From Mytilus californianus (lineage: Eukaryota), in the NCBI RefSeq assembly GCF_021869535.1, contig NW_026262745.1, positions 24,180,001 through 24,244,000 of the forward strand: DNA of 64,000 nucleotides. Reading direction: 5' to 3'. The position numbers and the translations under genes were made by a program. The notes under the pieces are model-generated. The model did not search any database, was not told the origin of the DNA, and was given only the letters and a program-made list of their open reading frames with translations. Of this stretch, positions 2,440-61,200 are shown piece after piece. The stretch's first letter is position 1; every line of letters begins with the position of its first letter.

Positions 2440-5400
2440 ATGAGTAAAAAGAGTAAAATCCTTGTAGCAGCAATTGACTTTGGAACAACGTTTTCAGGAT
2501 ATGCATTTTCCTTCAAAACCGATTATGAAAATGATCCAATGAAAATTTCTGTCAATCAACAATGGACAGCTGGTTCTAGAAGCTTGATATCACTGAAGGC
2601 ACCGACTGTTGTCCTGTTAGACAAATCCAAAAAATTCCTGGCATTTGGATACGATGCTGAAGACAAGTACTCGGAGTTTGCTTTAGATGAAGTTCACCAT
2701 AATTATTATTACTTTCGTAGGTTCAAGATGTTACTACACGAAACAAAGGTAAATTTATATCTATTGTCTTCATTTCGATTTTAGTTTTATTTTCATATTG
2801 AAACCTGTTTTAAGAGACCACTTAAGGGAGAGCTAACTTTACAGGGGCGGATCCAGGATTTTGGAAAGGGGGGGCGTAGTTGTAAAAATTTTTTGGACCT
2901 TTTCTGGGCTAAAAAACATAAAATAAGTGTATAATGCACATTTTTAGTGACGGTTCCTAGCGTGGGGTATGTATATATATTATGTATATTATAGTTAAAG
3001 TGTAAGCTTGGGTTGGACATTTTTGATGCCGCATTCTCCCCATTAATTGTCTATTATAAAATGATTGAATGGATCTAAAGCTATGTACTAATATATTTGA
3101 TGTGGGATTTGTCAGTAAAAAATGGACATGGAAAATTCTCGTTTGTTGTATGGTTAGTCAGCATAACCTCACAAATTACTTGTTGTAAACATGATATACG
3201 GATATTCAATGAAGTTTATAATACGACCGACACGAACAAAGACAAACAAGCAATTTTTATCCAAATGTTTGGTTGAAATGTTTCACACAACAAGGGAAGT
3301 GATGGTTCCAAATCAACCAAAGGCTAGGAAGGAGTCTGAAAATTAAATGACAACGAAGTTGTGAATGACGGTCGACAAATGGAGACATAAAGGCCACACC
3401 CAGCAGGCAGGTTGCAGTTGGGCCTTGAAAAAAGTATTCAGTATATCAGTTCGGCGAAACAGACATTCCGGTCAGTTATGGGATTTACATGCAACCCCCT
3501 CAAAAAAAAAATAACGCCCGTTTTTTATTCACCATGTTCATTTAATGCTGATTAATTCTGTTGGATTTTTCAGAATTTTTTCTCTAAAATATCTCAGACT
3601 GCCCTATCAAATCAAATGGTCCGTACCTTAGACTTTAAATATATCTAGAGCTTACTGACTGGGGATCATTATTCAGCAATGTTATTAATTGGCTGGGGCG
3701 TGTGGGGTTAAATATATTTTCGTAGGTAAATAATATTGTCGTGGAACTTTTTTTTTCATGAGAGTGTAATAGAGTATTACATTCTGTTGAGTGGAAATAT
3801 GAAATAGAAGTCAATACGTTCTTGCTCAATCCTTTGTCGCTTTGAAGGTGGCATGCTTTTCATCCTCCGCCTAAGCAATGTGTTACTGTAATTTGAATTT
3901 CAAAATGACTGAGTGACGTTTCAAACGTACTGATCAACTCCACCGTAGCGAAACACATGACTGACATAATCAATAATATATTACGGTAAATACGAGCGAA
4001 AAATATCTTTATAAGTAAAGAATTGTCGCATAAAAATTAAATACACGACCGGGAAATGGCAAAGTTCACGAAGTCTAGTCTGATTCATCATTTTACAAAA
4101 AAAAAAAAAAAGTTCAAGCAAAGGGGGGGGCGTACGCCCTCTACGCCCCCCTCTGGATCCGCCACTGCTTTATATGATTTTTATTGTACAAATTTTTACG
4201 TCATTATGTGCATTTTCTTCCACTTAAAAACCTTCCTCTTGTTAGATTGTTAGTTCAGAAAAGACTTCAGCGGTGTCACTGTGTCTTCATATTTTAATCT
4301 ATTGTAAATGTTATTCAATAATTTATAATTATTCAATTCTCGAATATGGTCGTTGTGGCATGACGTGGACAATTGACCACTGTGAAAGTATTAAAGATAT
4401 TTATTTTGGTAAACTTGTATAGATGGGTCTCAGTAAAGTTTATTCAAATTATAATTTTATTAGTCCCCTACCGACGAAGTCGAAGTGGACTTTAGGTTTG
4501 CACTCCGTCTGTCTGTCTGTCCATCCATCAGTCCGGCAAATCAGTTTTTCACACTTTTTTCTTCGTTCTTGAAGATATGGTTTTGATATTTGGTGTATTG
4601 TTATATCATGACAAGTTACAGATCAAGTTCGAATCTTGTTCCGGTCTGACGATTTTGTGCAGAGTTATGGTCCTTGAACTTAGAAAATTCACTCAAATAA
4701 TCAGTTTTCCGCACTTTTTTTGTCATGCTTGAAGATACTGATTTGGTGATTGGTATTTAGTTTTATCATGACAAGTTACAGATCAAGTTCGAATTTTGGT
4801 CCAGTCTAATGATTTTGTACAGAGTTATATGGTCCTTGGACTTAGAAAATTCACTCAAATAATCAGTTAACCTCACTTTTTTTCGTCATGCTTGAAGATT
4901 TTGTTTTGATAATTACTAGTAGTATATAGTTTTATCATGACAAGTTACAGATCGATCAAGTTCGAATTTTGTTCCAGTCTGATGATTTTGTGCAGAGTTA
5001 TGTTCCTTTGACTTAGAATCTGAAAATTCACTCAAATAATCTATTTTCCACATTTTTGTTCGTCATGCTTGAAGATATTGACTTGATATTTGTTATATAG
5101 TTTACAACATGACAAGTTATAGATCAAATTAGCATTTTGTTCCAGTACAATGAATTTTTAACCGGTAGAGGACTATGTATTGCCAGGCAATACTCACAGG
5201 ATGCTCGAGTGTTCTTGGCCTCTTGTATATTCATTCTGGAGTTTAGTTTATTCAAATTTAAAGCAGTAGAACAGTTTGGTGAATATATGATGATATATAT
5301 TCGTAAATGACATGCGTTGTTCGTTTATTTATTTATTAAGCATCTTACACGAAAGACGATGGTCAAAGATGATGATGGTAAAGAAATGCCAGCTATAGAA

Positions 5401-8400
5401 ATATTCTCCATGGTTATAAAATATCTAAAGGGTCATTTGTTAGAAACATTGGAAACAAGAGGAACTGGACTAGATAATAACGACATTCATTGGGTGTTAA
5501 CAGTACCAGCTATTTGGACAGAACCTGCTAAACAGTTTATGAGAGAAGCCGCAGAAAAGGTACCGTGAACCTGTAAACTGATGTATTTTTTACTAACTTA
5601 TTTTCAATTATCAGCGGAATCAGCATTATTTTGGGCTATATATTTTCATCAGGTTACTTCATATATATGCATATAAATAACCATTACTGTAATTGGTTTG
5701 TTTGACGGAATTGGTTACAAACAATTTGACAAAAATATAATTAAGTTACTATAACTAATAAATGAAAGTACACTTTTCAAATTTTTTAGCTGACATAGCA
5801 AAAGGTGTAAGTGTAAGCTATCATTTATGTATAAAATTAGGAGGTAAGATTGCCTATGAAAAAACTATACAACGGATTCCAAATAAAAGTGGATTTTTAG
5901 TCTGTTAATATTTCATATTTTCATCCAAACTTGACCCAACAAAGCAGGAATAAAGTATAGAAGATCATATGTGGACATTCCCTACTTTGAACTTTTTTAG
6001 CGAAAAACATTACCACAAGGAGCAAATGTTGATTATGATTGGTCATTTTCAAATTCCTTATTCTTTGAAAATACATGGCCAACTTTTAATAATTTAAACT
6101 TACGAGAACTTGGTCACCCTCGTTCTGTTTACAGATAGAATCAAATAGGTTTTCTAGGATATCATATTTTATCTTCTCTTTGTTTTTAAACTTTACTTCG
6201 TCTATTTTAATCGAACTTGACAGAAATTATGTTTGCTTTTATAAAAATAAATTCAGATCTGATAACACTTTGCTGCAAAAGACAACATTAAAAGTTTTCA
6301 AATTTCATGTTTTTTTTGGTTCATGGCCAATTCTTTTAAAACTTTATTGGTAGATGAGTATGAGATCTTTAAAAGGGACTCGGTTAGCAGATTAAAAAAA
6401 TTAATCGATGTTTTTTCAGATTTTTCAGTAAACTGCACATTGCTAGAAAACAAAGAAATATTGATGCCATCATTAAATACGTTAATATAAAAGTAATAGA
6501 AATAGACAGTAAAAAATTAAAAAACCTTGATTAATTTTTATGCCCCCGCCGTAGTTTTGTTACCCTTGTCCGTCTGTATGTACGTTCGTACGTCCCAAAA
6601 TTGGTTTCCGTTCTCTAACTTTAGTTTGCCTCAACCAAATGTTATGAAACTTATACACAGTGCGTATTACCACAAAACACAGATCAAGTTTGAATTTTGG
6701 TGGCGTCACTTTAACCGTTCTAGAGTTATGCCCCTTTATAAATGGAAAAATTGCAAAATTTTTAGTTTCCGTTCTCTAACTTAAGTTTGCCTCAACCAAA
6801 TGATATGAAACTTGTACACAATGCTTATTACCACAAAACTCAGATCAAGTTTGAATTTTGGTGGCGTCACTTTAACCATTCTAGAGTTATGTCCCTTTAT
6901 AAATTGAAAAATTGCAAAAAAAAATATTTTCTTTTAAATATCAAGTAATTTTTAAAATTGGAGTTATCTTCCTTTGTAGTTGAATCAACTACAATCAATG
7001 CTTTATACAATGCATTGTTTAATTTTTACTTCCACTGATAAAACACAGATCAAGTTGAATTTGGGTAGTGTCACTTTAACCATTTTTGAGTTATGCCCCT
7101 TTATGAATCGAAGGATTGCAAAATTTTTAGTTTCTATTCTGTAACTTAAGTTTGCCCCAACCAAACATTATGAAACCTATACACAATATTCATTACCACA
7201 AAAATAAGATCAAGTACAAATTTTTTGTTTCCGTTTTCTAACTTTAGTTTGCTACAACCAAAAGTTATGAAACTTATACACAATGCTTATTACTACATAA
7301 TACAGATTAAGTACGAAATTTGATGGCGACACTTTTACCATTCTTGAGTTATGTCCCTTTATAAACATAATTTTTCGTTTCCGTTCTCTAACTTTAGTTT
7401 GTCTCAACCAAATGTTATAAAACTTATACACAACCCTTCTAGAGTTATGCGTGTTTACAAATAGAAAATTGCTGAATTTTTAGTTTCTGTTCTCTACTTA
7501 AGTTAGCCTCAACCAAATGTTATGAGACTTACACACAATGCTTATTACCACAAAACTCAGATCAAGTTCAAATTTGGGTAGCGTCACTTTTACCGTTCTT
7601 CAATTATGTCCCTTTATAACTATATGATATGCAAGCGGAGGCATCACCTGTGTCCATATGTGGACAGTGAGTCACACTATCCACATTTATTTTTTAATCT
7701 GCTAACCGAGTCCCGGTGGTCAATGGTGGTACATATGTTCAAGGGTCCTTGACACCACACGTAAGTACCTGAAAGTTTCCGAATATGACCTTGCTTTCGC
7801 CAGGAAATTTGATTTTTTTTCTTGATTGAAACGATAGCTGAATAAGGTTGTCATGGATCGACAAACATATGCATGGATTCGATAGAATATTCGTTTGAGA
7901 AGAGATTGAGTGACTTTGTAAGGTATATGGCCAGATAGAAATAATTATAATATTTTTTCATTTAAAGAAGGTTGTGCAATTCAAAATGGCGACTTGGATC
8001 CCTTTAGGATTTTTCAGTATACGGATGTGGATAGTAAACTGCACATTGCTAGAAAACAAAGAAACATTGATGCCATCGTTAAATACGTTAATAAAGTAAT
8101 AGAAATAGACAGGAAAAAATTAAAAAAACATTGATTAATTTTTTTGTAATCTGCTAACCGAGTTCCTGTGCTTCGTTACCAATTTTTCTCCACAAAAATG
8201 TGTTGGTTATCTCCTAAATATGCAGCTAGACGTTTCTCGGACTTTAAGCACCCTTTATTCCACAAATCAAATAAATGAAGTCATTTAACAAAAAAAAATT
8301 ACCTTACAAGCTCCCTAGCTCAAGCCGTGTGGTCATTTGTGATATCACCGATGGCTAATAACGAATTGCCATAAAGACCCCTCATATTTTACCCCATGTA

Positions 8401-11400
8401 AGTTTTATTCACATTGGCCGAGTTTCAAGTACTTGTATTATTTTAAAGAGCTTGTTATCAGCTATTACGTCTAACACAAAACAACCTTTATTATTGTAAT
8501 TTATTTAAATAGGCTGGTATTAGTGGTGAACAACTTAGTATTTGTTTGGAACCAGAGGCAGCATCCTTATACTGTCAACATTTACCAATAGAAAAACTAA
8601 AGGATAAAGATGGTATAGGCAGTGAATTTACGGCATCCGGAAAAGGGTCCAAATACATGGTTATAGACTTGGGAGGTAGGTTAGATTAAAGTAAAACAGA
8701 CAGAATTTGCTCAATTAGACTTGCTTACGATCAGAACCAACATTTTTGAACCAATAGATACATACAAAACAGACATGGGAACAATTTATCCCTAAAGTAC
8801 ATACTTAAAAAGATAATAATTCAGTATGGCTCATTGAAAGTATTTCTACTAAAGTCTTATCAACATAGGCTTTTTAACCGGATTTTCGAAGGAAATATCG
8901 GTTATTGATTTGGGGATGTACAGCGGGCGAGCGGGCGGGCGGACGGGCGGCTGCCAAACAGTGTCTCTTCAATTACATAAAAACGCTGTGATGATTTTTT
9001 TTCAAATTTAGATATGTTGTTTCTTGTGATTAAATGAAGGTCTAGTTCAATTTTCACGATTTTAGTATTTCTCCTTTTTGAGTTATCGCCATTTTTAATA
9101 TCCAAAAGTGGTATTTTTAAATATTTTTCTCTTGTTATCATATTATGACTAAGTTTATGGTAAATGTCTTATCTCACAATAAAGATTGGAGTGACAGATC
9201 TATTTGAAAATTTTCTATTTCCTAAGTGGTGATGATTATAAGCTATATTATTAGACATTTTGAAGATTATTACATTATTAATTATTATATATGTACAGTT
9301 AGAGTACTATGTTAAACCATAGTTCTGTTCAAAGGGAAATAACCCTTCAGATTTGCAAGTATAATTTTCATTATTAATTAGATCTGGGAAATATCTTAGC
9401 ATATGATAATCATTGGAGTGACAGATTTATTTGAAAATTTTCTGTTTCTGTAGGACTGTATATATAAAGTTTGAAATTTACTAGTAGGACTGTATAAATG
9501 AAGTTTGAAATTTACTGTTCATTATTAGACATTTTGTAGATAATTAAGTCTCCCTAAACCATATATATTCTTACCCCCAACCACCTTCAATTTGTGAATG
9601 TGCTTTTATCTTGTAAACGGTCGAGATCCCAACCCCTATACCATATATATTCTTGTATGGGACAATAAAACAAATCAAATGAAATATTGGGGGAGTCCCA
9701 GGGTTCATCCCCACACCCTTCTTTTTAAAAACTTGTAAACAGCCAAGATCCCCACCCCGAAACCATATATATTCTTGTATGGGACAATAAAACAAATCAA
9801 ATGTAATAAAAGGCTAGTCCCCTGGGGTCACCCCCACCCACTCCTGTTTGATAACTTGTAAACGGTAAAGATCCCCACCCTGAAACCATATATATTCTTG
9901 TATGGGACAATAAAACAAATCAAATGAAATATAGGGGAAGTCCATGTGGGTAACCCCCAACCCCCTTCTTTTTGATAACTTGTAAATGGTCAAGATCCCA
10001 ACCCCGAAACCATATATATTCTTGTATGGGACAATAAAACAAATCAAACGAAATATAGGGGAAGTCCAGGGGGTCACCTCCACCCCCTTCTTTTTGAAAA
10101 CTTGTAAACAGTCAAGATCCCCACCCCGAAACCATATATATTCTTGTATGGGACAATAAAACAAATCAAATGTAATAAAAGGCGAGTCCCCTGGGGTCAC
10201 CCCCACCCCCTCCTGTTTGAGAACTTGTAAATGGTTGAGATCCCCACCCCTAAACCATATATATTCTTGTATGGGACAATAAAACAAATCAAATGGAATA
10301 TAGGGGAAGTCCCCTGGTGTAACCCCCAACACCCTTTTTTTGAAAACTTGTAAACGTCAAGATCCCCACCCCAAACCATTTATATTCTTGTATGGGACAA
10401 TAAAACAAATCAAATGAAATAAAAGGCGAGTCCCCTGGGGTTACCCCCACCCCCTCCTGTTTAAGAACTTGTAAACAGTCGAGATCCCCACCCCTAAACC
10501 ATATATATTCTTGTATGCAACAATAAAGGGGAGAGTCTCCTGGGGGAACCCCCCCCCACCCCTTTTTTTGAGAACTTGTAAACGGTCGAGATATCCACCC
10601 CTAAACCATATATATTCCTGTTCTTCGTCATTTCAAGAAGATTTGAATGACATACAGGGTCAATCCATAGGCGTCGATTATGCATATCACAAACCAATTT
10701 GTACTGGACTTTGCCCGATGTCAGGTGACCATGGGAATGACGAATTATTGGAGCTTTGTTTGGGAGACTTCGTAACAGCATCCTGTTACAATTATTTCTT
10801 GATTTCTTGTTACTGATAAGTTTTATAGATTTTGAAAAGACATTATATTAATTAGTTAATGATAAATAAAATTTTGGATTTTTTTCTTCTTTTCTTTGGT
10901 AAATTGTTTGAAGAATTTTGTGGCAAGTTTGTTTGTTATTCTGTAAAAACTAATTTTCTGAATGCTATATATTTTTTTTTTTGATGAAGTAAACTCCTTT
11001 AAAAACTAAGCTTATATTGTCTATTAATAAACATATATTTAGATTTCTGATTTTGGGCCCAGTTTTCAAGTTGGTCCAAATCGGGGTCCAAAATTAGACT
11101 GTGTTTGATTTCTACATAAATTGAATATATATATAGGCTTCTTTGAAATGCTTAATCTAAACCTGTATTTCCTTTCATTATTAATAAGATAATACCATAT
11201 TGAGGTCCAAAAGGTCCTAAATTAAACTTTTGATTAATTTCATCAAAAATTCTTTGGTTCTTTGATATGCTGATTCTAACAATGTTTGAGTGTTAAATCA
11301 TATCTAATTTTAGAGAACTTAGTCATCACTGGTTGTTGTTATTATATTATTGATTATAATTTGAAAAATTGCATCATATCTTATTTTAGAGAACTATTTA

Positions 11401-13578: not shown

Positions 13579-13847
13579 ACGAGTTGAGCTTTTATATTCG
13601 TTTAACAATTGTTTACAGTGTGATGTTGAGAAAGATAGCGGACGTTGAACGCAATGATAGTAGACATACATTTGAATTATCACTTTGACATTAAAATATT
13701 AAAATTAGGCCGAGATATTCAGTTTTTGAAAAATCTAGCATTTTAAAAAGTTTTCACAGTGACTTTAAACAAAACATCCTTTTACCATTACTCTCCCTTT
13801 TGGTATTTCTCTGTGCACTTTAGATTGCAGTCTTATGTTTCATACAC

Positions 13848-14087
13848 TAAGAGAGGGTCTTGATGGGGTTTACAGAATAGAGAATAATGGAACAATACTA
13901 CAGAATAAGGGGTAAAAAAATAAAGAATAGAACAAAATAGGCAAAAAAAATAAAAAAAAATAAGAATAATGGGGTTTTAGAATATAAAGAATAGCGAATA
14001 ATGGGCAAAAAATATAAAGAATCGAGAAAAATGGCTTGAAAAATTAAAGAATACAGAATTGTGGGACTCCTCATCCAAACCTTCCTA
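13848..14087. mobile_element. Degenerate MITE with internal AGAATA-rich minisatellite just 3' of HSPA12
   Basis: Weak TIRs GAGAGGGTCTTGATGGGGT / ACTCCTCATCCAAACCTTCCT around reiterated AAAGAATA(G) units. Confidence 0.4.
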
Positions 14088-15039: not shown

Positions 15040-15074
15040 ACCATTATTTACGTAACGAAACAGACACGGTGAGT
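15040..15074 (+). promoter_or_regulatory. Candidate non-coding first exon/donor of MIEAP-like gene A
   Basis: TAACGAAAC (IRF half-site-like) followed by consensus donor ACG|GTGAGT at 15068/15069. Downstream acceptor TTTTTTAG at 16984 precedes the ATG exon. Confidence 0.3.
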
Positions 15075-16510: not shown

Positions 16511-17027
16511 GTATTTAAAATCATTTGGAATACATAGCCTGCGTATCAAACCTTTGAAATTTGACGTTCCCTGCTTCAGAATTGCATGTTGATGGATTTA
16601 ATATTTGTTGAATATCTAAACAATTAATATTTTCGTATGATAAAAGAACATGTCTATTTTTTGTTTAAAATGACAATGTTGTGTACATATTGAAATTTAC
16701 ACATGCGTTAAATACAACTTGTACGTTTTAGTCGATTAAATGTATGTGTGAAACATTGGTTGCAGCATACCAAAGGTCCAGATTACAATCAGAACAAGGT
16801 ACACTCTATAGACACAGTTATGTCGAATGTCTTTTGTTGATTTGTAGTTTAATATTAACAATACAAGAATTATTACAATAACATTCAATAATATTTATAT
16901 AATTTGACATTTTATCTTGATTTGATGGTAGTGTTCCGTCATGGTTTGCTTCTCGTGAGTTATTGAACTGGATGTTTTTTTTAGATAATTGTTATCTTCG
17001 CCAAACACGGTGGAATTATTTGTGGTA

Positions 17028-50500: not shown

Positions 50501-53500
50501 AGAAAATGTTAGTATTGTAGCCTATGGCAGAATAAATACTACCGTTTTCCCTTTAGGGGCATCGTCACTTCCGTTACCATGTTGAGCGAGTGGGTGAAAA
50601 AAATATGCTATATTGCACGAATTTTTCGGCAAATTAAATTCTTATAATTGCTCATCAGCACTGCTGTCATCAGGGAATTATGATTAAGTACCTACGGAAC
50701 AAACATTATTTCTAGTTTATCCTGCATAATGACGACCACGAAGACGCTTGATGAACTTTAATATTGCAGGGATACAGGCGATCCCCTCTATCTGGTAAAT
50801 GACGTCTTAAAGCCGTGCAAAATGGACGAATTTTTCCGGTAAAGATATAACTCAAAAGTGGTCTATTAATGTAATAAGAATCTGTAAATCACCGACGATC
50901 GTAAACAAATTCCCCGTTTCCATTCTCTATTCTTTAAGATTTTTTTTTTTCGCATGAAGAAGGTATACATTTAAAAAAAAAATGTTCGCCAGTGATGCAT
51001 TACTATTCGTTGCTATAGACGAATTGAATCATATGAAAGCTGCATATATGCTTACCACGCTGAGCTATGCAATTTGATTCGGCTTAAACAGAATCACTTT
51101 TATTTACGAGGAGAATTGCTGAAAACCGTACGGTTAATTTTGAGGTCCAGACAATGCAGTGAAAGATGGGCCTGAACCTCCAGAGTAGAACTGTCAATTC
51201 ATGGAGAAATCGTATTAATCAAATTGTTACAAAAGCATGTGGAAGTCTAAACATCCTAAGAATGTTGAAGTATCATGTGTCTAGAAAAGTTCTGATTAAT
51301 CTATACTTCTCTTTTATACGACCTGTTTAATAAGAGTATGCAGATATCTGTACTCTTCAGGAGGACAACTTGTTAAAGGTTGCTGAAGTGGCTGCAAGTA
51401 GGATTATAACGGGACTCAGAGTAAATTGCCCAAAATCTAAGATGTGAACCTTTATATACACAGTGTTGGAATTGTACTGTACGGTTTTATTTTAAATACT
51501 TTTCGGTCATTCGGGAGACTATGAAGCGGAGCTGCGCCATTCGAAAGAATAACCAGTTGCTTATTGTAAAGTTTGATGTAAAGTTATGACACATGCCCCG
51601 TTTCCATTCTCAATTTTATTGACTTATGACTTATATGACTTATTGGTTTTGCTCAGTTCTTCTTCTTCTTCTTCTTCTTCTTCTTCTTCTTCTTCTTCTT
51701 CTTCTTCTTCTTCTTCTTCTTCTTCTTCTTCTTCTTCCGCCGCTTTTAAATTTGAACTTGTCCGCACCCGTTCTCCAAAACCCCTTGTCAGATAAACTTA
51801 GGGTTTCACAATATGTTAGACTAACATGTCTAGTGGTGCAATCAGGGTTTTGTTTGTGCAATTGGGTTTATAAAGGGGTACTTTGAGGGGCAAAAAGAAA
51901 GGAGGGTTTTACTATAGAACCCTATGGGATTTTACTTTTAAAAATTTTCAAATGATTATAAATTGAAAACCGTTTGTGATAGACACAATCTTTTTAATTG
52001 AAAATGTTCTAAATGATAAAGCACATTAAATGAAATACAGGGTTAGTCCCCAGGGGTCACCCCACCCCCTGCCATTTAAGAAAGTTCTTATATCTTGTAA
52101 GTGGTCAAGATCCCCACCCCTAAACTATACATATTCTGGTTTGTCATGCTAAGATGGTTTGAATGATATACAGGGTTAGTCCCCAGGGGTCATCCCGACC
52201 CCCTGCCATTTGAGAAAGTTCTAATATCTTGTAAATGGTCGAGATCCCCACCCCTAAACCATATATATTCTGGTTTGTCATAATAAAGCACATCAAATGA
52301 AATACAGGGTTAGTCCCCAGGGGTCACCCCACCCCCTGCCATTTAAGAAAGTTCTAATATCTTTGTAAGTGGTCAAGATCCCCACCCTTAAACCATATAT
52401 ATTCTGGTTTGTCATGCTAAGATGGTTTGAATGATATACAGGGTTAGTCCCCAGGGGTCATTCCGACCCCCTGCCATTTGAGAAAGTTCTAATATCTTGT
52501 AAATGGTCGAGATCCCCACCCCTAAACCATATATATTCTGGTTTGTCATGATAAAGCACATCAAATGAAATACAGGGTTAGTCCCCAGGGGTCACCCCCA
52601 CCCCCTGCCATTTAAGAAAGTTCTAATATCTTGTAAGTGGTCGCGATCCCCACCCCTAAACCATATATATTCTGGTTTGTCATACCAAGATGATTTGAAT
52701 GATATACAGGGTTAGTCCCCAGGGGTCATCCCGACCCCCTGCCATTTGAGAAAGTTCTAATATTTTGTAAATGGTCGAGATCCCCACCCATTAACCATAT
52801 ATATTCCTGTTCATGTCTCGAACATTTGAATGACGTATATGGTCAGTCCCCAGGGGTTCCCCCCACCCCCAATGTTCTAATATCTTGTAAATGGTCGAGA
52901 TCCCCACCCCTAAACCATATATATTCCTGTTCGTCATGTCTCGAACATTTGGATGACGTTTAGGGTCAGTCCCCAGGGGTTCCCCCCACCCCCAATGTTC
53001 TAGTATCTTGTAAATGGTCGAGATCCCCACCCCTAAACCATATATATTCTGGTTTGTCATGCCAAGATGATTTGAATGATATACAGGGTTAGTCCCCAGG
53101 CATCACTAATGCATATAACTTTACTGGACCAAACCAATTTTCACTGGACTTTGTCCAATGTCAGGCGACCCTGGGAATTACCAATTATGGGAGCTTCGTT
53201 TGGGAGACTTCGTAACAGCATCCTGTTACATACATTTCTTGTTACTATATTTATTTGTATTTTTTACTCTTTAATAGATATAAGAAGATGTGGTATGAGT
53301 GCCAATGAGACAACTCTCCATCCAAGTCAAAATTTAAAAAAAGTAAACCATTATAGGTCAAAGTACGGTCTTCAACACGGAGCCTTGGCTCACACCGAAC
53401 AGTAAGCTATAAAGGGCCCCAAAAATTACTAGTGTAAAACCATTCAAACGGGAAAACCAACGGTCTAATCTATATAAAAAAGAGAAACGAGAAACACTTA

Positions 53501-56500
53501 TGAACCACATCAACAAACGACAACTACTGAACATCAGATTCCTGACTTAGGACAGGTGCAAACAAATGCAGCGGGTTTAAACGTTTTAATGGTACCAAAC
53601 CTTCACCCTTTTTCTGAAACAATAGTGTAACATCACAACATAGAAAGACACACTATAAAATATCAACTGCAATAGCTTAACTCAATCAAAGGACATATAA
53701 GCACCAATGAACATACAATGAACAAATACATTTGACCGATGATACAATGCAAATACTGTTTATATGAAAATCAGATAAATACCCAGCCCAGATAATTGCT
53801 CAAACAAGGTAATGGGACTGTTAAATTTTATAAATTCAAATGTTAAATTTGTTAAACTCTGGTTGAGGAAGTAACAAACTTACTATCTTACCATTCTTGG
53901 GAAAATGTCTGTACCAAGTCAGGACAATAGCTGTTGTTTTTAATCTGTTCCCTTGATTGATAGCGTTTGATTTTGTCTGTTTTTATGGATTTCCCCTTTT
54001 TAATCGACCGCAAAAAAATTTTGCGGTCGTATATTGGTATGACGTTGGCGTCGTCGTCGTCATCGTCCGGCGTCGGCGTCGTCGTCCGGCGTCGGCGTCG
54101 TCGTCGTCGTCGTCGTCGTCCGAAGACACATTGGTTTTCGCAATCTAACTTTAGTTTAAGTGAATGGATCTCTATGAAATTTTACCATAAGGTTCAATGC
54201 CACAAAAGGAAGGTTGGGATTGATTTTTGCTACCAACAGTTAAGGAATTAGGGGCCAAAAAGGGGCCAAAAATAAGCATTTTTGTAACTTCCAGACATAA
54301 CTTGTGTGTTAGTGTATGGATCTCTCTGACATTGTACCACAAGGTTCCATATCACAAAGGGAATGCTGGGATTGATTTTGGGGGTAATTGCCTCCAAATT
54401 TTAGAAATTAGGGGCCAAAAAGGGGCAAAAAACAAGCATTTTTCTAGTTTCATGACAATAACTTGTGTGTAAGTGTATGGATCTCTCTTGACATTGTACC
54501 ACAAGGTTCCATATCACAAAGGGAATGCTGGGATTGATTTTGGGGGTAATTGCCTCAAAATTTTAGGAATTAGGGACCATAAAGGGGCAAAAAAACAAGC
54601 AGTTTTCTAGTTTCATGACAATAACTTGTGTGTAAGTGTATGGATCTTTATGAAATTGTACTACAAGGTTCCATATCACAAAGGGTAAGCTGGAATTGAG
54701 TTTGGGGGTAATTGCCCAAAACGTTTAGGAATAAGGGGCCAAAAATAAGCATTTTTATACGCCCGTCAAATTTTTGACGGGACGTATTATGGTATACAAA
54801 TGTCCGGCGTCCGTCCGTCTGTCTGTCCGTCTGTCCGTCTGTCTGTCCGTCTGTCTGTCCGGCGTAAACATGTCGCACCGTTACTTGAGAATGACTTATC
54901 CAAATTTCATGAAACTTAACATAGTTGTTTGTTATGATGGTCAAACGATCTGTATACTTTTTGGTGAAAATAAGATTAAAACTTTTTGAGTTACGGGACT
55001 TAGTAACTAAAACAGGTGTGTGTTTTTTTTCACATGTCGCGCCGTATCTCAAAAACAATTTATGATTATTGCTTAAAACTTTACACACTTCTTAGTTATA
55101 TTAATCTTAAGATCTTTTTTGGTGATGATTCAAAATTTTATTTTAGAGATATTGAGTATTTTGTTAAAAAAGGGGGAGGGGTTTTTCACATGTCGCGCCG
55201 TATCTCAAAAACAGTTTATGATTATTGCTTAAAACTTTACACACTTCTTAGTTATATTAACCTTAAGATCTGTATATTTTTTGGTGATGATTCAAAATTT
55301 TATTTTTGAGTTATTGAGTATTTTGTAAAAAAAGGGGGAGGGGTTTTTCACGTCACGCATTATCTCAAAAACGATTTATGATTATTGCTTAAAATTTTAC
55401 ACACTTCTTAGTTATATTAATCCAAAGATCTGTATACTTTTTGGTTTTGATTCAAAATTTTATTTTTGAGATATTGATTTTTTTTTTTTTAAAGGGGGGT
55501 TTTCACATGTCGCGCCGTATCTCAAAAACGATTTATGAGTATGGCTTAAAATTTTACACACTTCTTAGTTATATTAATCTAAAGATCTGTATACGTTTTG
55601 GTTTTGATTCAAAATTTTATTTTAGAGATATTGAATTTTTTTGTAAAAAAAAAGGGGGGGTTTTTGCATGTCACGCCGTATGTCAGAAACTATTTATGCT
55701 TATTGCATAAAAATTCACACACAAGACGACGGGCGTATCATGCGCTCATGGCGCAGCTGTTTATTCTAGTTTCCAGACAATAACTTGTGTTCAAGTGTAT
55801 GGATCTCTCTGAAATTGTACTGCAAGGTACCATACCACAAAGGGAAGGCTGGGATTGATTTTGGGGGTAATTGCCTCAAAATTTTAGGAATTAGGGACCA
55901 TAAAGGGGCAAAAAAACAAGCATTTTTCTAGTTTCATGACAATAGTTTGTGTGTAAGTGTATGGATCTTTATGAAATTGTACTACAGGTTCCATATCACA
56001 AAGGGAAAGCTTGGTTTGAGTTTGGGGGTAATTGCCCTAAACGTTTAGGAATTTGGGGCCAAAAAGGGGCCAACAATAAGCATTTTTCTAGTTTCCAGAC
56101 AATAACTTGTGTTCAAGTGTATGGATCTCTCTGAAATTGTACTGCAAGGTACCATACCACAAAGGGAAGGCTGGGATTGAGTTTGGGGGTGATGAATCAT
56201 AAGGGGGTTCAAAAAATTTGGGGGGGGGGATTTTTTTTTCCTTTTTTTTCTTTAAAATTTTCCATTTTAAATTGATTGTCTGATTTATATATAAAAGCAA
56301 ATAATAATGATATGGTTTGAATAGGTAAATTAAAATTTTTTAAGTTCTTAGAACACATTCATTCTGTGTCAGAAACCTATGCTGTGTCAAATATTTAATT
56401 ACAATCCAAATTCAGTGCTGTATCAAGCTTGAATGTTGTGTCCATACTTGCCCCAACTGTTCAGGGTTCGACCTCTGCGGTCGTATCAAGGTGCGCCCCA

Positions 56501-59500
56501 GCGGAGCATTTTATTGAATTTGCATTGGATTTTAGTAATTTGTTATACTTGTTTACAATAGTAACAGTATTCAGCTATACAATTCATATTTCACGCACCT
56601 TATTATTGTTATTTTATATATCATCTTTTATGATTCCTTTCAACTTTCGTCATAATTGTCGCCATAACACATGCATTTTTCAATCATTATTATATTATGA
56701 CATTGTTAAATATCAGTTGTGTACCTGAGATGCTTTTGATTTGATATATTAATTTGAGTTACATGTATTTCCCTTAGAATGTAAAATGTCTTTGTTCACA
56801 CGGATTTGCTATGTTTTTTATTGCTTTGTATTGAGAATGATGTACAGGTATATACTAAGCTAAACCTGTTATCCAATCAATTTCAGTTATTTTCTGAATA
56901 AAATATGTTAAAATTAAATACTAGTATATGATGTTTTGATTTATCCGAAGCTTTAACTAATAAACAGATCTCAAATGTTAATTCAAGGCGAGAACGAATA
57001 AATTGTTTGTGTATGGTAGGACTAAACATTTTAATCACCACAAATCACCTCTAATACATTATAAACGCAAAGCTTAATCGTTCAGATTGTATGGATAAGG
57101 TTCTCCAGTCAGATTTCTTCGATATCAAGATGTTTTCCCCAATAAAATCGTTCGTCCTTTAAGAATTCCAATAATATAAATAGTTGCTAACGTCTGCACC
57201 TTAATACAAATTATGGGCAGGGCATTCCAGTTTCTAACAGTCTTTGTATAAAATAATTCCCTCTGAGTAGCTGTGCTTCAAGACGTTAATTGGAAGGAAC
57301 TTTTATCTGAATCTGAATAGGTACGTTGCAGGGCTAGTATATGGCATCAATGGCACCGGAAGAGAGGCACTGGAAAATTAGTCCAACGATGTGAGAGGAA
57401 GCTCTCTATTTTCTTTGCTCACACGAGATTGGCTGGTAGTCTATTCCAATCGGAAATTGTTCTTACAAAGAATGACTGTTTGTATTGGTCAGATTTACTA
57501 GGTGGAATTTTGAAACACCGGCTGTGGTTTTGTACAAATTGGTCTACAATGTTTGTTGTTTTATAGTCACTAAATTGTTTGGATTTTATTTGGCGTTTTG
57601 GTCTCGTTTTGATTAATACTGAATCTTGCGGGATAGCTGGTACCAACTCCCCGGCCACCTTGAAGAGAAAAGTGAGCCTACTGTGACACCGTCTGTTTTC
57701 AAGTGTTGGAAGTTTGAGTTCGTTCATTAGTCACCTTATACTACCTTCCTCTTTGCTTGTATACTCCCCAATGATGAAACTACTTGTCTCTGGACGCGTT
57801 CTAGTGCATTAATGTCCTTGATTAAATAAGGGTCACATACTATGGATGCGTATTCTAACAGTGACCGGATAAGCCCTAAGGAAGCCTTGTTTCCTGCAAT
57901 CCTTTGGACAATGACGGAGGTTTCGTCGCAAATAGCCTAGAGTGGAGTTAGTTTTCTTCACGGTTTTAGCAATGTGGACGCCCCATCTCAGATCATCTGA
58001 GATAATAACACCGAGGTACAGATTTTGTTGTACCTGTTGCATAATTTGGTTGTCTAGTTTGTAGAATTGAGATGATTTGTTGTTGACGCTCATCACTGTA
58101 ACATATTTTAGATTAAATCTCAAATCCCATTTGTGATCCATTCTTTCTATGATACAAGGTCGTTTTGTAGTAATTTGTGGTCCTGTTGTGTTTGGACTTT
58201 ACTATATAGTAGGCAATTGTCGGCGAATAATCAGACTGAGATTTAACAATTTCAAGTAAGTCATAAATATGGACAACAGCGGTCTATGTACCGTGCCTTG
58301 TGGTACTCCTGATGCTACACCCACAGAGTTAGAATTTTCGCAATCTACCAGGACTCGCATAGATCGTTTCATATTTGAATTTCGACTAAATCGGGTTGGA
58401 TTGATGCATCTTTGTGGACATTTATTATTTTTTTCTGTGTTCTTCAATTGATATAAAAATAAGGAGATGTAGTATGTTTACTAATGAGACAATTATCCAC
58501 CAAAGTTCAAATGAAGTGGATGTAAGCAATTATATGCAACAAGGAATTCAATCATGAGTAAATTAAATCCGTACCATATAGTCCGCTATAAAATGCACCG
58601 ACAGGAAAAATAGGAAAAAGTTCAATTGAAAAAACTAACAGCCTAATTTATAACAAAACAATTTACGAAAAAACAAATATGACAGACATGAACCAATGGA
58701 TTTTCAGGAGGTGTTGGATCCATATGTGTGTGTCCCCTTTTATCTCATAGTGGTGAAGTTTGTGTATTTATAGGATGTGAGACACTTTGTTGAATGCTTT
58801 GCTGAACTCCATAATTAAATTGTTGACTTAAAGCACTGGCTAGGTGTCACAGGACAGCCTTTTCCGAAAACCATGTTGGAGTTGATGTTGATGCTAGATG
58901 TTGTACTGATCAGCATGAGCTATGATGTCACTAGTTTCAATTTTATTTATATACAAACAACGAAAAAAAATATACTTCTCATAATAATTGCTATTCTGTA
59001 CATTTTAAAATAGCCACCACGCCTCATATAGACTATCGCACATCAGCGAATGGACCATCGAACTTCGGCGCAGACCATCGCACTTCAGCGTGACCATCGC
59101 ACCTCAGCGTCCCCATTGCACCTCCGAGTCCTACATATTTAATTGCATTCAGTATAATCTTGTATTCTTTTATTTTTAGTACGCAAAGTTGGTACGAGAA
59201 TACAAACCAGAAAAGCCCTTAAATCCGAGCAACCTTAGAACCGATTTGTATAGAGCATTGTGTGAAAGGCAAAGTTCTTCAAGCTATGTAGACGCTGTGT
59301 ATGAATTTTATTTCTTATTTCGGTTAAGTGAAGAGTATGATCTACTTGAGAGGCAAAGTAAAAATCAAAAGCAGGTTAGTTTAATATATATAGTAAACAA
59401 TGCAATTTGAATTCTTGTACGAAATCGTACGCGTATATTCAATAAGATATCGGACCCTAATAAATAGGTAGTCATTATAGCCAAAGTTTTCATTCGTAAT

Positions 59501-61200
59501 GATATAAAAGGGGATTTAACAGTATATACATAAATGATATAAACTATAAGGAAATGTAGTGTTAATGTTTAGTAGAGGTTTGCTACATACAAGGATGGAA
59601 TTGTTCCTAGGGTTCTTAGTTCTAAAGGTCTAGTCGTTTTATGAACGCAATCTTGATTTTGGTGACAATTGTGACATACCGGTGTTCCAGATGGTCATGG
59701 ATTTGTACCACTTGTCGAAACCACAAAAAAGAATAAACACGACTAAGGCGGAAAAAACGACTTTCGTCTGTAAATGATATTATCTAAATTTACGGGCTCT
59801 ATAAACATCATCACCATCAAAATTAGGATGTGATATCCCGTTTGTAATAAGATTTCTACAAGACTTTAGTGCATCCATAATATTAAACCAAATTGTTTGT
59901 ATCTGTGGAAACAATAAGTAAAGGAGAGGCAAAAGATACCAAACGGACATTCAAATCATAAGTCGAAAATAAACTGACAACGCCATGACTATAAAAGAAA
60001 AAGACCAACAGACAAACAACTGAACACAAAACACAACATAGAAAACTAAAGACTGATCAACATGAACCCCACCAAAAACTGGGGGTTGATCTCAGTTGAT
60101 CCGGAAGATCATCCTCCACATGTGGCTCATGTTAGTACAAACCCGGTGTTAAGTCTTATTCGATAGGGGAAAAGTGGATGGGATTGTAGTTACGACAATT
60201 GGAACATATCCGTTGACATCTGGGAAACAGATATTCCATAACGGCCAACCAACTCGTGATGGCGTCCGTAAATTTATTAATAGCTTCCCTGTTAGCAGCA
60301 ACCCTCTATCAAGAAAATCATGATAGGAAATACAAGACCTGGAATATCGTATCAACTGGGAGATATCTACTCCGTATGCAGGCGCTGCTTGAATGTTGCT
60401 ACATAGAAATGGAAAGTTCACAATTGGGAAGCTGAAATCTTCTCTTTTGTCGTAAACTTTTGTTTAGTAAAGGTTTTAAGTAAATTGTGTTAACGAAATC
60501 TCTGACTAATGAATTTACTATAATGTAATTTCTAAAACAGAATAAAAAACGCTTCTTATCACATAAAACTTTCTTGTTTTGAATTTTATTATAAAAAGTA
60601 GAAAATTTTGAAAATATGAGTGTTATCGAATATGGTTGCAGAATAAATACTGTTCCCCTAACGTAAGAAAAGCTTACCATGTGGACGAATCTGGTCCCCC
60701 TCCTTTTTGAGTTCATGTGATTCTTGGCTTTTTTTTATGTGTAAATTTGCTGTACATCATATATGAGTTTTGAACATCAGTAAACTACTATTGCCTCTTA
60801 TTTACAAGATATAGACTATTTGCTTATGTTGTATACGTATCGTCCTGAACATGCACGAAATAATTGCCACTGGACGCTAGGCAAACAGCATTCAATTATA
60901 TATCGAATGTGTAAAACCATTGTGATAATATTCATTAAAGCATATTTCGGCAACAGTTGGCGCTAACCAGCAACCTGCAGTGCCAAAAACAAGAGTTTCG
61001 AACTTTGCAGCTACTGTTTATACACCTGGAAGACAACAAAGTGTTGATTCTGCATTTCCACAAAATCACAATAATGTTAAAATCATCGAAGAGGAAAATG
61101 CAGGACTAAAAGTTTTAGTTGACAGGCAAGGCCAAGATATTATTTTGCTACAGAAGGCGAAGAGAGACAACGAACGGGTTATTGATGAATTAAGAAACAG
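47529..61200 (+). CDS. Third MIEAP-like paralog C, 5' part only (3 coding exons in window)
   Basis: join(47529-47684, 59180-59374, 60941 or 60971-61200). Exon 1 MSVGSYYIPPSLRSRPGINQIL matches gene B MSVIQPVGRGDYFIPREYRRRPNIEVIL. Exon 2 TDLYRAL..DAVYEF matches B SNLYVVL..TAMEEF. Exon 3 ends in coiled coil VIDELRN-AG|GT (phase 2), as in A and B. No downstream exon recognised before 64000, so the MIEAP domain itself is not seen. Confidence 0.7.
47995..48056. repeat. (CGAAA)n pentanucleotide microsatellite
   Basis: About 8 perfect AACGA/CGAAA units at ~48004-48045, with flanking degenerate units, preceded by GTGCCGGGGAAGCG. Confidence 0.85.
48270..48620 (+). mobile_element. Highly degenerate CR1/L2-like LINE RT fragment
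   Basis: Broken-frame translation gives NFRSIS, QSGF, GSTGYQ, DVRFIF, EKVWHKGLL.YKL, matching the NYRPISL/QSGF/DKVWHxGLLxKL RT signature. Confidence 0.5.
48750..50237 (+). mobile_element. HINE-like element with (GTC)n microsatellite and ~160-bp core repeats
   Basis: 5' ACGATCGCAAA..TTTGCGTTCGTAT, (GTC)n, repeats of GGATCTCT.TGAAA...CCACAAAAGGAAGGTTGGGATTGATTTT, 3' CCAACTGTTCAGAGTTCGACCTCTGCGGTCGTAT. Same family as 53997-56515. Confidence 0.8.
51637..53246 (+). mobile_element. HINE-like element with (TTC)27 and a 134-bp satellite array
   Basis: (TTC)n at 51657-51737; tandem units anchored at 52035, 52168, 52302, 52436, 52570, 52704 plus shorter variants; 3' GGGAGACTTCGTAACAGCATCCTGTTAC shared with 9543-10814. 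Confidence 0.8.
53997..56515 (+). mobile_element. HINE-like element (GTC microsatellite family) interrupted by a second HINE
   Basis: 5' CGACCGCAAAAAAATTTTGCGGTCGTAT, (GTC/GGCGTC)n, core repeats, 3' TTCGACCTCTGCGGTCGTAT..GCGCCCCAGCGGAGCA. Confidence 0.8.
54756..55765 (+). mobile_element. Nested HINE with (GTCC/GTCT)n and five ~158-bp repeats
   Basis: 5' ATACGCCCGTCAAATTTTTGACGGG; 3' GACGGGCGTAT + TGCGCTCATGGCGCA hairpin. Inserted into the T-run of the host motif AAGCATTTTT|CTAGTTTCC, which is intact in neighbouring host units. Confidence 0.85.
57180..58365 (-). mobile_element. Degenerate L2/CR1-type LINE 3' fragments (two adjacent 3' ends)
   Basis: VASGVPQGTV, WDLRFN..YLGVIISDDLRW..HI..NSTLGYLRRNL, LKLPTLENRR..SFFVRTISDWNRLP. 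A second C-terminal motif (TVRNWNALP) lies at ~57190-57280. Confidence 0.85.
59036..59130. repeat. GC-rich ~19-21 bp minisatellite just upstream of gene C exon 2
   Basis: GACCATCGCAC(T/C)TCAGCG-like unit repeated about 5 times with variation. Confidence 0.7.
59920..60470 (-). mobile_element. Penelope-like retroelement RT 3' fragment in gene C intron 2
   Basis: NFPFLCSNIQAAPAYGVDISQLIRYSRSCISYHDFLDRGLLLTGKL, LYDKREDFSF-like upstream, shared 3' tail. Confidence 0.8.

What the first reader, a model, noticed from the sequence alone, without database searches (positions are those of the whole stretch)
2440..61200. Candidate undescribed module: atypical Hsp70 (HSPA12) linked to a tandem array of GrpE-like MIEAP-domain proteins
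Seen: an intact HSPA12-type Hsp70 is followed within 3.5 kb, on the same strand, by three MIEAP-family paralogs, with no other host gene recognised between them. Known: Hsp70 ATPases need nucleotide-exchange factors; GrpE is a dimer of a long coiled coil, a helical bundle and a C-terminal beta head; dnaK-grpE are linked in bacteria; HSPA12 has no established dedicated NEF that I know of. Inference: the MIEAP-like proteins have the same order (coiled coil, helical region, beta-rich head) and the head aligns by eye to GrpE. The cluster could be a co-evolving ATPase plus exchange-factor/adaptor system whose variable N-termini supply specificity, as in stress or innate-immune surveillance. As I recall, both families are strongly expanded in bivalves; this needs verification.
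Basis: inference. Interest (0 to 1): 0.85.

Follow-up and report, generated by a model that had tools for sequence, protein, structure and literature searches.

The report
Conserved mussel HSPA12–MIEAP gene neighbourhood
In this mussel, an atypical Hsp70 gene (HSPA12) lies next to an array of MIEAP-domain genes; the same pairing occurs in scallops, freshwater mussels, clams and zebra mussels, and the closest solved fold to the MIEAP domain is, weakly, the Hsp70 exchange factor GrpE, so the two poorly understood families may work together.

Summary
The window is Mytilus californianus DNA. It carries an intact 4-exon HSPA12-type gene (2440-13578, +). Gene A, a MIEAP gene of 399 aa with RNA-supported splicing, starts 3.45 kb downstream. 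Gene B (about 458 aa, predicted) follows, then the first three exons of gene C (428 aa), whose MIEAP domain lies beyond the window. A fourth MIEAP gene follows C. A, B and C are only 24-31% identical, so they are old paralogues.

- **Linkage.** A MIEAP-family gene or exon lies within 10 kb in six of seven comparison loci of this HSPA12 orthogroup: Mytilus galloprovincialis, Mizuhopecten, Pecten, Mya, Dreissena and Potamilus. It is missing in Sinanodonta. Two Saccostrea paralogues outside the clade also lack it. The adjacent HSPA12s form one 100/99 clade that follows the species tree, so the linkage is ancestral.
- **Fold.** An AlphaFold model (pLDDT 90) has a long helix, a helical bundle and a small beta head. 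GrpE takes the top nine Foldseek PDB ranks, but weakly (E 0.023, TM about 0.3, Z 7.0 or less).
- **Sequence.** Every sequence or profile test against GrpE failed.

Exchange-factor activity is untested. I found no paper describing the linkage or the fold resemblance. Unchecked scan notes report more MIEAP clusters 60 and 191 kb further on.

The parts
2440..13578 (+). HSPA12-type atypical Hsp70 gene. Four coding exons: 2440-2748, 5341-5559, 8513-8675, 12530-13578 (stop included). 579 aa.
   Evidence: tblastn with P0001. The best-scoring GT/AG splice-site combination gives an open frame 96% identical to P0001. The phosphate-1 (DFGTT), phosphate-2 (DLGGGT) and adenosine (VGGFSESP) motifs are visible in the translation printed. 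Pfam HSP70 scores 43.5 bits on the orthologue P0001 and covers only profile positions 93-377 of 599.
17028..21088 (+). MIEAP gene A, 399 aa. Exons 17028-17045, 17346-17507, 17880-18071, 18435-18562, 18863-19049, 19899-20003, 20234-20344, 20792-21088.
   Evidence: All seven introns appear as GT..AG joints in transcript contigs of run X1 (two also in X5), and two of them also in raw RNA reads of X21. Boundaries were refined and the frame is open. Pfam MIEAP scores 37.6 bits in the last exon. The M. galloprovincialis orthologue sits in the same position in L002.
27689..33466 (+). MIEAP gene B, predicted at about 458 aa. Exons 27689-27880, 28691-28952, 29868-30099, 30378-30573, 31761-31847, 32461-32577, 33176-33466. 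The exon 2/3 and 5/6 boundaries are the least certain.
   Evidence: Splice sites were chosen by family-HMM score among frame-compatible GT/AG pairs. Pfam MIEAP scores 48.7 bits in the last exon. There is no RNA evidence for this gene.
47529..61200 (+). MIEAP gene C (= P0137, 428 aa), first three exons only: 47529-47684, 59180-59374, 60941-61200. Exons 4-8, including the MIEAP domain, lie beyond the window end (L001 34128-46280).
   Evidence: Exact translation match to P0137 across the junctions. The gene span and the following fourth MIEAP gene are in L001, which is identical to the window from 37529 onward.
13579..17027 (.). 3.45 kb spacer between the HSPA12 stop and the gene A start. It contains a high-copy interspersed repeat at about 16000-16600.
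   Evidence: Very high contig depth and many rearranged joints at 16000-16600 in all runs. No long ORF. No canonical heat-shock element anywhere in the window.

Best explanation
This is the Mytilus californianus copy of an ancient bivalve gene neighbourhood. One particular HSPA12 orthogroup has stayed next to MIEAP-domain genes since before Pteriomorphia, Unionida and Imparidentia split.

Shown: the gene models, the recurrence of the adjacency, and the single HSPA12 clade that follows the species tree.

Inferred: the linkage persists because the two gene products are functionally coupled, either through shared regulation (a head-to-head pair in five species) or through physical partnership.

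The specific mechanism I consider most attractive is unproven. MIEAP proteins would dimerise through their long helix and use the C-terminal helical bundle plus beta head as a GrpE-like module on the HSPA12 nucleotide-binding domain, as exchange factor or adaptor. Their divergent N-terminal regions would then supply specificity. My confidence of 0.45 applies to functional coupling of some kind. The GrpE-like exchange-factor version alone is about 0.15-0.2.
For: Adjacency within 10 kb, by locus:
- M. galloprovincialis L002: a 648-aa MIEAP gene head-to-head 4.4 kb upstream, and the gene A orthologue 2.7 kb downstream.
- Mizuhopecten L004: MIEAP-family exons in the gene head-to-head upstream.
- Pecten L011: an HSPA12 homologue head-to-head, 5.4 kb from MIEAP P0209.
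- Mya L005: MIEAP genes on both sides of two HSPA12 genes.
- Dreissena L007: a 665-aa MIEAP gene upstream on the opposite strand, with a 325-aa gene of unknown family between it and HSPA12.
- Potamilus L014: an uncalled MIEAP C-terminal exon 4.1 kb downstream.

Other evidence:
- All adjacent HSPA12s fall in one 100/99 clade whose branching follows the species tree. The two Saccostrea genes without MIEAP neighbours lie in the sister clade.
- With about 53 MIEAP genes per roughly 1 Gb genome (PMC8382680), a random 30 kb stretch would hold one about 0.2% of the time (my estimate).
- Fold: GrpE holds ranks 1-9 of Foldseek PDB hits for the domain model. It is rank 1 of 48,161 chains for the full model, and GrpEs of five species score Z 5.3-7.0. 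GrpE chains are almost the only top rows whose alignment runs from the long helix into the beta head; nearly all other rows stop at the helix or the helical region.
- The HSPA12 ATP-binding motifs are intact.
- Anecdotal: an HSPA12A and a 71 kDa 'SPATA18' proteoform both rose in zebra mussel gill after cadmium exposure (PMC11036304).
Against: - The species loci are orthologous, not independent, so the data show retention of one ancestral linkage rather than repeated association.
- Both families duplicate locally and form large mixed regions. Sinanodonta locus tags interleave them on one chromosome, and unchecked scan notes report more MIEAP clusters 60 and 191 kb beyond the window. Such regions make adjacency easier to keep by chance.
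- No MIEAP neighbour was found for Sinanodonta P0041 or for the two Saccostrea HSPA12s. No Hsp70 neighbour was found for the Saccostrea and Pinctada MIEAP loci.
- No Hsp70-MIEAP fusion was found.
- The GrpE match falls below confidence thresholds. The MIEAP helical region is much larger than GrpE's. Sequence and profile tests are negative.
- The published model for mammalian Mieap gives the C-terminal structured region a lipid-binding role in condensates (PMC10845071).
Confidence: 0.45

Rival explanations
1. Neutral retention. An ancestral chromosomal region happened to hold both an HSPA12 gene and MIEAP genes. Both families then expanded by tandem duplication, and slow local rearrangement kept some members adjacent. 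The products have no functional relationship.
For: - A single orthogroup carries the linkage.
- The linkage is lost or absent in Sinanodonta P0041 and in the oyster loci.
- MIEAP loci without Hsp70 neighbours exist.
- Orientation and spacing vary: head-to-head upstream in most species, tail-to-tail downstream in Potamilus, same-strand downstream in Mytilus and Mya.
- There are large MIEAP arrays around the window.
- No fusion proteins were found.
Against: - The adjacency is kept in four orders that, to my knowledge, separated roughly 450-500 million years ago.
- The same head-to-head form is kept in Mytilus, two pectinids, Mya and Dreissena.
- A, B and C are 24-31% identical, so the array is old and maintained rather than a recent burst.
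- The independent, though weak, GrpE fold signal points to the same partner family.
Confidence: 0.35
2. The strict version of the first reader's idea. The MIEAP C-terminal domain is a true, highly diverged homologue of GrpE and acts as the dedicated nucleotide-exchange factor of HSPA12.
For: - Foldseek ranks 1-9 are all GrpE. The best is 3a6m_A at E 0.023, probability 0.89.
- VIA-align gives 1dkg Z 7.0 with 142-145 of 151-158 residues aligned.
- A GrpE cluster is among the 60 nearest ESM Atlas models.
- There is a short motif resemblance around a conserved Pro-Ala: WPAV in MIEAP against RPAMV in GrpE.
- The conserved Hsp70-family neighbour is analogous to the bacterial dnaK-grpE linkage, which also appears.
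Against: - TM is only 0.3-0.4 and rmsd is 9-18 Å over the full alignments; it is 5.8 Å over 89 residues at best.
- Z is under the tool's stated threshold of 8.
- hhalign of the MIEAP profile against 12 diverse GrpEs gives probability 0.2%.
- There is no GrpE hit from Pfam at E up to 10 or from the profile search of PDB sequences.
- Plant GIL1/IRKI_C, ciliate and fungal proteins are much closer in fold, at TM 0.5-0.63.
- The MIEAP helical region has about 145 residues, against GrpE's short bundle.
- The atypical HSPA12 domain may not use GrpE-type contacts.
Confidence: 0.17
3. MIEAP proteins in bivalves act as in mammals, as condensate-forming, lipid-binding scaffolds for mitochondrial quality control, or as a generic C-terminal recognition domain. 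HSPA12 is merely a co-regulated stress gene that shares a chromatin domain or bidirectional promoter.
For: - The published Mieap model has an IDR/coiled-coil N-terminal half and a hydrophobic structured C-terminal half that binds phospholipid (PMC10845071).
- The P0137 model has the same layout, with a disordered linker at 127-159.
- The head-to-head arrangement in five species fits shared promoters.
- Unchecked scan notes report B-box/coiled-coil-MIEAP fusions elsewhere in this genome, which would suggest a modular recognition domain.
Against: - In the window, the MIEAP genes that are present are co-oriented and downstream, not promoter-sharing.
- There is no heat-shock element in the window.
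- No expression correlation was measured here.
Confidence: 0.25

Closest known systems
Bacterial dnaK-grpE(-dnaJ) linkage and the GrpE nucleotide-exchange factor (PF01025; PDB 1DKG, 3A6M, 4ANI, 8GB3; human GrpEL1 9BLS)
   Same: An Hsp70-family ATPase gene sits next to a gene for a protein built as a long helix, a helical bundle and a small C-terminal beta domain. GrpE is the top solved-structure match for the MIEAP domain.
   Different: There is no detectable sequence or profile similarity, and the fold scores are weak. The MIEAP helical region is about three times larger. The genes are separately transcribed animal genes, often divergent, not an operon. The ATPase is the atypical HSPA12, not a canonical DnaK.
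Mieap/SPATA18 (Pfam MIEAP, PF16026), the p53-inducible mitochondrial quality-control and condensate protein of vertebrates
   Same: Genes A, B and C carry the MIEAP domain above Pfam's cut-off, and share the layout of an N-terminal coiled-coil/disordered half and a structured C-terminal half.
   Different: They belong to a family of tens of paralogues per bivalve genome (PMC8382680), with 24-31% identity among neighbours. Their N-terminal halves are unrelated to those of vertebrate Mieap. To my knowledge, human SPATA18 and HSPA12A/B are on different chromosomes.
HSPA12A/HSPA12B, atypical Hsp70s greatly expanded in bivalves
   Same: The closest homologues are annotated HSPA12A/B-like. The ATP-binding motifs are present, and Pfam HSP70 matches only the NBD part.
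   Different: This gene belongs to one specific orthogroup whose distinguishing feature, found here, is its MIEAP neighbours. No partner or mechanism for HSPA12 is described in the review consulted (PMC13580251).
Plant GIL1/IRKI C-terminal domain (PF24994, DUF641), and unnamed ciliate and fungal proteins, including basidiomycete G-domain proteins
   Same: These are the closest predicted-structure neighbours of the MIEAP domain outside MIEAP itself (TM 0.5-0.63 over 180-240 residues).
   Different: They are known only as predicted models, and no sequence relationship was tested here. No link to Hsp70 is known to me.

Membership tests
HSPA12 (atypical Hsp70) | Actin-like/Hsp70 nucleotide-binding domain with phosphate-1, phosphate-2 and adenosine motifs | tested here: met
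   DFGTT, DLGGGT and VGGFSESP are present in the translation. Pfam HSP70 scores 43.5 bits against a cut-off of 20.6 on the 96%-identical orthologue P0001. PDB Hsp70 NBDs match at E 2e-7.
HSPA12 (atypical Hsp70) | Closest relatives are HSPA12A/B, and the canonical substrate-binding domain and lid are not recognisable | tested here: met
   [quoted passage not shown] The Pfam match stops at profile position 377 of 599. This agrees with the review's description of HSPA12 as lacking the lid.
MIEAP (PF16026) | Pfam MIEAP domain above the gathering score | tested here: met
   Gene A last exon scores 37.6 bits, gene B last exon 48.7 bits, and gene C (P0137) 59.1 bits over profile 1-192 of 195, against a cut-off of 27. 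For gene C the domain lies outside the window.
GrpE (PF01025) | Sequence or profile similarity to GrpE | tested here: not met
   There is no PF01025 hit at E up to 10 for six family members. hhalign against E. coli GrpE gives probability 0.15%. hhalign against an alignment of 12 diverse GrpEs gives probability 0.2%. The profile search of PDB sequences finds no GrpE at E up to 10.
GrpE (PF01025) | Fold: long N-terminal helix, helical bundle, compact C-terminal beta domain | tested here: inconclusive
   The same order of elements appears in the models (pLDDT 84 and 90). GrpE holds Foldseek ranks 1-9 (E 0.023-0.45, TM 0.2-0.34). VIA Z is 5.3-7.0 with 89-153 residues aligned at rmsd 5.8-21 Å. All values are below the tools' confidence lines.
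GrpE (PF01025) | Homodimer that binds the Hsp70 NBD and accelerates ADP release | not testable with these tools
Hsp70 plus linked co-chaperone gene module (dnaK-grpE type) | Gene adjacency conserved across distant lineages | tested here: met
   Six of seven comparison loci of this HSPA12 orthogroup, spanning four bivalve orders, have a MIEAP-family gene or exon within 10 kb. The loci are orthologous, so this is one retained linkage.

The most novel reading that the evidence does not exclude
The MIEAP domain is a eukaryotic, highly diverged GrpE-like module. MIEAP-domain proteins are the missing co-chaperones (exchange factors or targeting adaptors) of the orphan HSPA12 ATPases. The two families co-expanded in bivalves as a combinatorial stress or immune surveillance system. 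The same partnership may underlie vertebrate Mieap/SPATA18 function.
Probability: 0.15. Interest if true: 0.9.

Novelty: new variant of a known kind. Interest (0 to 1): 0.62.

Why it matters
A 2026 review describes HSPA12 proteins as mechanistically untested. They number in the tens per bivalve genome, and no partner is known for them. Mieap/SPATA18 is a p53 target in mitochondrial quality control whose structured C-terminal domain has no assigned fold.

Two observations point the same way. The gene linkage between one HSPA12 orthogroup and MIEAP genes is very old. Independently, GrpE is the nearest solved fold to the MIEAP domain, though weakly. Together they turn a vague co-expansion (noted separately for the two families in PMC8382680) into a testable hypothesis: do MIEAP proteins bind HSPA12 and regulate its nucleotide cycle?

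If they do, both families gain a mechanism and the bivalve expansions gain a rationale. If they do not, the locus remains a clear example of long-lived microsynteny between two expanding families.

Tried and rejected
- **Sequence homology to GrpE.** Four tests were all negative: Pfam at E up to 10, hhalign against E. coli GrpE, a profile search of PDB sequences, and hhalign against 12 diverse GrpEs fetched from plasmid and chromid records. A protein search with E. coli GrpE returned only relatives that were all at least 88% identical, useless for a profile.
- **Rosetta-stone fusions.** Nine long MIEAP-family representatives (758-1379 aa) carry no Hsp70 domain. Several are merged tandem MIEAP genes.
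- **Heat-shock elements.** Neither orientation of the trimeric nGAAn consensus occurs in the window, where about 1 is expected by chance.
- **Generality of the association.** A more distant HSPA12 paralogue (Saccostrea P0094) and two MIEAP loci (Saccostrea P0144, Pinctada P0127) show no partner within 10 kb. I therefore reject the reading that HSPA12 and MIEAP genes are paired genome-wide.
- **A third conserved component.** The unannotated neighbours (Dreissena 325 aa, Mya 168 and 123 aa, Pinctada 816 aa, Potamilus 179 aa) share nothing across species.
- **Literature.** I found no paper linking Mieap/SPATA18 with GrpE, Hsp70 function or HSPA12 in a mechanistic way.
- **Wasted or omitted steps.** One megablast of a MIEAP exon against E. 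coli genomes was pointless. The exact spliced HSPA12, gene A and gene B proteins have no reference id. I therefore did not look them up in the contig index or fold them, and I did not fetch the region upstream of the window.

Full report
**What the window is.** The window is AT-rich animal DNA (GC about 0.33). Locus L001, fetched through protein P0137, is identical to the window from position 37529 onward. It comes from assembly GCA_021869535.1, record JAKFGE010000009.1, 99,871,944 bp. A protein named by NCBI as Mytilus californianus lies on a contig of exactly that length. The window is therefore M. californianus, at about 24.18-24.24 Mb of that scaffold.

[quoted passage not shown] The best-scoring GT/AG splice-site combination gives exons 2440-2748, 5341-5559, 8513-8675 and 12530-13578. 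The frame is open and encodes 579 aa, 96% identical to P0001.
- The three ATP-binding signatures of the actin/Hsp70 fold (DFGTT, DLGGGT, VGGFSESP) are present in that translation.
- Pfam HSP70 matches the orthologue only over the nucleotide-binding part, profile positions 93-377 of 599.
- PDB Hsp70 NBDs match weakly.
- All named relatives are HSPA12A/B-like proteins of bivalves.
- A 2026 review states that HSPA12 function is unknown and notes the bivalve expansion (PMC13580251).

**The MIEAP genes.**
- *Gene A.* A 1263-nt transcript contig of run X1 covers the seven coding exons downstream of the short first exon, and GT..AG joints in X1 (two also in X5) span all seven introns. Two of the joints are also seen in raw RNA-seq reads. 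After placing the cuts on GT/AG, the exons are 17028-17045, 17346-17507, 17880-18071, 18435-18562, 18863-19049, 19899-20003, 20234-20344 and 20792-21088, giving 399 aa. The start codon is 3.45 kb after the HSPA12 stop.
- *Gene B.* This is a prediction without RNA support: seven exons between 27689 and 33466, about 458 aa.
- *Gene C.* This is P0137, 428 aa. Only exons 1-3 are in the window (47529-47684, 59180-59374, 60941-61200). Its other five exons, with the whole MIEAP domain, lie 10-20 kb past the window end. A fourth MIEAP gene of 441 aa follows it.
- *Family membership.* Pfam MIEAP is met for all three genes.
- *Divergence.* A, B and C are only 24-31% identical, so the array is old.
- *Intervening sequence.* ORFs between the genes are repeat or transposon-like.
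- *Further clusters.* Unchecked notes of this scan report more MIEAP clusters 60 kb and 191 kb beyond the window.

**Is the adjacency more than chance?** Regan et al. (PMC8382680) count 53.1 MIEAP and 68.1 Hsp70 genes per bivalve in their largest orthogroups, against 0.6 and 4.4 in other molluscs. They did not examine linkage. With such numbers in genomes of about 1 Gb, a random 30 kb stretch would contain a MIEAP gene about 0.2% of the time (my estimate).

I looked up the genomic surroundings (±10 kb) of the closest HSPA12 homologues in other species.
- M. galloprovincialis: a 648-aa MIEAP gene head-to-head 4.4 kb upstream, and the gene A orthologue 2.7 kb downstream.
- Mizuhopecten: the head-to-head upstream gene has no Pfam hit on record but contains MIEAP-family exons, 52-74% identical to Pecten P0209.
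- Pecten maximus: reached from the MIEAP side through P0209. An uncalled HSPA12 homologue lies head-to-head 5.4 kb away, with an apparent frameshift.
- Mya arenaria: two tandem HSPA12 genes flanked on both sides by MIEAP genes.
- Dreissena polymorpha: a 665-aa MIEAP gene upstream on the opposite strand.
- Potamilus streckersoni: an uncalled MIEAP C-terminal exon 4.1 kb downstream.
- Negative: Sinanodonta P0041, although MIEAP and HSPA12 locus tags interleave on the same chromosome.
- Negative: two Saccostrea echinata HSPA12 genes.
- From the MIEAP side, a Saccostrea locus and a Pinctada locus show MIEAP tandems but no Hsp70.

**Orthology.** I built a maximum-likelihood tree of 34 HSPA12 proteins. 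All six MIEAP-adjacent genes in the tree fall in one clade (100/99). The Pecten homologue was not included in the tree. Within that clade, Mytilus plus pectinids, Unionida and Imparidentia separate as in the species tree. The Saccostrea genes fall in the sister clade.

The simplest reading is one ancestral HSPA12-MIEAP linkage, retained in Mytilida, Pectinida, Unionida and Myida. To my knowledge these orders diverged some 450-500 million years ago; I did not test that figure. The association is not general to all members of the two families.

**Is the MIEAP domain GrpE-like?** AlphaFold2 with a 43-sequence family alignment gives a confident model of P0137 (pLDDT 84). It has an N-terminal helical region, a disordered linker at 127-159, a 56-residue helix, a helical bundle at 229-372 and six short strands at 378-427. 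Residues 160-428 alone give pLDDT 90.

Evidence for a resemblance:
- Foldseek against the PDB puts GrpE at ranks 1-5 for the full model.
- Foldseek puts GrpE at ranks 1-9 for the domain model. The best is Thermus GrpE 3a6m_A, at E 0.023, probability 0.89 and TM 0.23/0.34.
- The Foldseek-independent aligner ranks E. coli GrpE first of 48,161 chains for the full model, at Z 7.0 with 142 of 151 residues aligned.
- That aligner gives Z 5.3-7.0 for GrpEs of five species. The best local superposition covers 89 residues at 5.8 Å, over the last helices and the beta head.
- Nearly all other top rows align only the long helix.

Evidence against:
- All these values are below the tools' own confidence lines.
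- Among predicted structures the nearer neighbours are other MIEAP proteins, plant GIL1/IRKI_C proteins, and ciliate and fungal proteins (TM 0.5-0.7). GrpE clusters reach only TM 0.32-0.40.
- Sequence methods see nothing.
- A short motif resemblance exists, WPAV in MIEAP against RPAMV near the GrpE C-terminus. It is not statistically supported.

**Reading.** Two independent lines point towards an Hsp70-partner role for MIEAP proteins. The first is a very old linkage to an Hsp70-family ATPase. The second is that GrpE is the only solved fold matching the whole C-terminal module. Neither line is decisive.

My estimates overlap rather than sum to one. Functional coupling of some kind: about 0.45. 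Neutral retention of an ancestral mixed cluster: about 0.35. The strict GrpE-type exchange-factor mechanism: about 0.15-0.2.

The published model for mammalian Mieap assigns the C-terminal structured half to phospholipid binding in condensates (PMC10845071). That model remains a live alternative for the domain's biochemical role. A proteomics paper reports that an HSPA12A and a 71 kDa 'SPATA18' proteoform both rose in cadmium-exposed zebra mussel gills (PMC11036304). This is anecdotal.

**Novelty.** The genes are ordinary members of known families, and their expansion in bivalves is published. I found no paper on three points: the conserved linkage of one HSPA12 orthogroup with MIEAP genes, the GrpE-like appearance of the MIEAP domain, or any HSPA12 co-chaperone. 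The library searched does not cover all journals.

**Limits.**
- Flanks were capped at 10 kb and look-ups at 12, so the synteny survey is a sample, not a genome-wide test.
- The spliced proteins of HSPA12, gene A and gene B have no reference id. I therefore did not submit them to the restricted tools, and the region upstream of the window, where the long head-to-head MIEAP gene is expected by analogy with M. galloprovincialis, was not fetched.

Noticed in passing
window:16000-16600 and window:20600-20680: Very high-copy interspersed repeats. Contig depth reaches tens of thousands in every run, with many rearranged joints and loose ends. One lies in the HSPA12-gene A spacer and the other in the last intron of gene A.
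   Followed up: no
window:9574-10600 (- strand ORFs), inside HSPA12 intron 3: Overlapping open frames with a reiterated peptide unit ('...CPIQEYIWFRGGDL...GVTPGDSPF...'), which suggests a tandem repeat or degenerate mobile element. A similar unit appears at 52703-53102.
   Followed up: no
window:40237-40697 (-), 43145-43657 (+), 60152-60463 (-): Three related ORF fragments ('...FTFRYIDDV.SLNN..FGDYVERIYP.ELEIKDT...'). They are also present in M. galloprovincialis L002 and Pinctada L010, so this is an interspersed element shared across bivalves. No Pfam family was found.
   Followed up: partly
window:35144-35982 (-): Two adjacent ORFs of 150 and 160 aa between genes B and C. The second has a faint DDE transposase hit (E 0.065), so this is probably a decayed transposon.
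   Followed up: partly
window:48759-49019, 51577-51883, 53891-54248: Long trinucleotide runs that read as poly-Ser, poly-Leu or poly-Arg in several frames, inside the first intron of gene C.
   Followed up: no
L011:635-4569 (-), Pecten maximus: An HSPA12 homologue, 84-87% identical to Mizuhopecten P0020, that is not among the called genes. The two halves of its last exon are offset by 2 nt (1420/1417), which suggests a frameshift: either a pseudogene or an assembly error.
   Followed up: partly
L011:21469-22251 and L011:27094-27876: The last exon of Pecten MIEAP P0209 occurs twice at 100% identity, 5.6 kb apart. This is either a very recent segmental duplication or an assembly artefact.
   Followed up: no
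ESM Atlas neighbours of P0137:160-428: The MIEAP C-terminal fold resembles plant GIL1/IRKI_C (PF24994/DUF641), unnamed ciliate and ascomycete proteins, and the C-terminal part of basidiomycete G-domain (MMR_HSR1) proteins. This suggests a wider eukaryotic fold family that may not be recognised as such.
   Followed up: partly
Sinanodonta woodiana chromosome CM100985.1 (locus tags ACJMK2_031003-031225): HSPA12 genes (031003, 031004, 031007, 031225) and MIEAP genes (031138, 031141, 031150, 031202, 031206) interleave within about 220 locus tags. This suggests a large mixed region in Unionida.
   Followed up: partly
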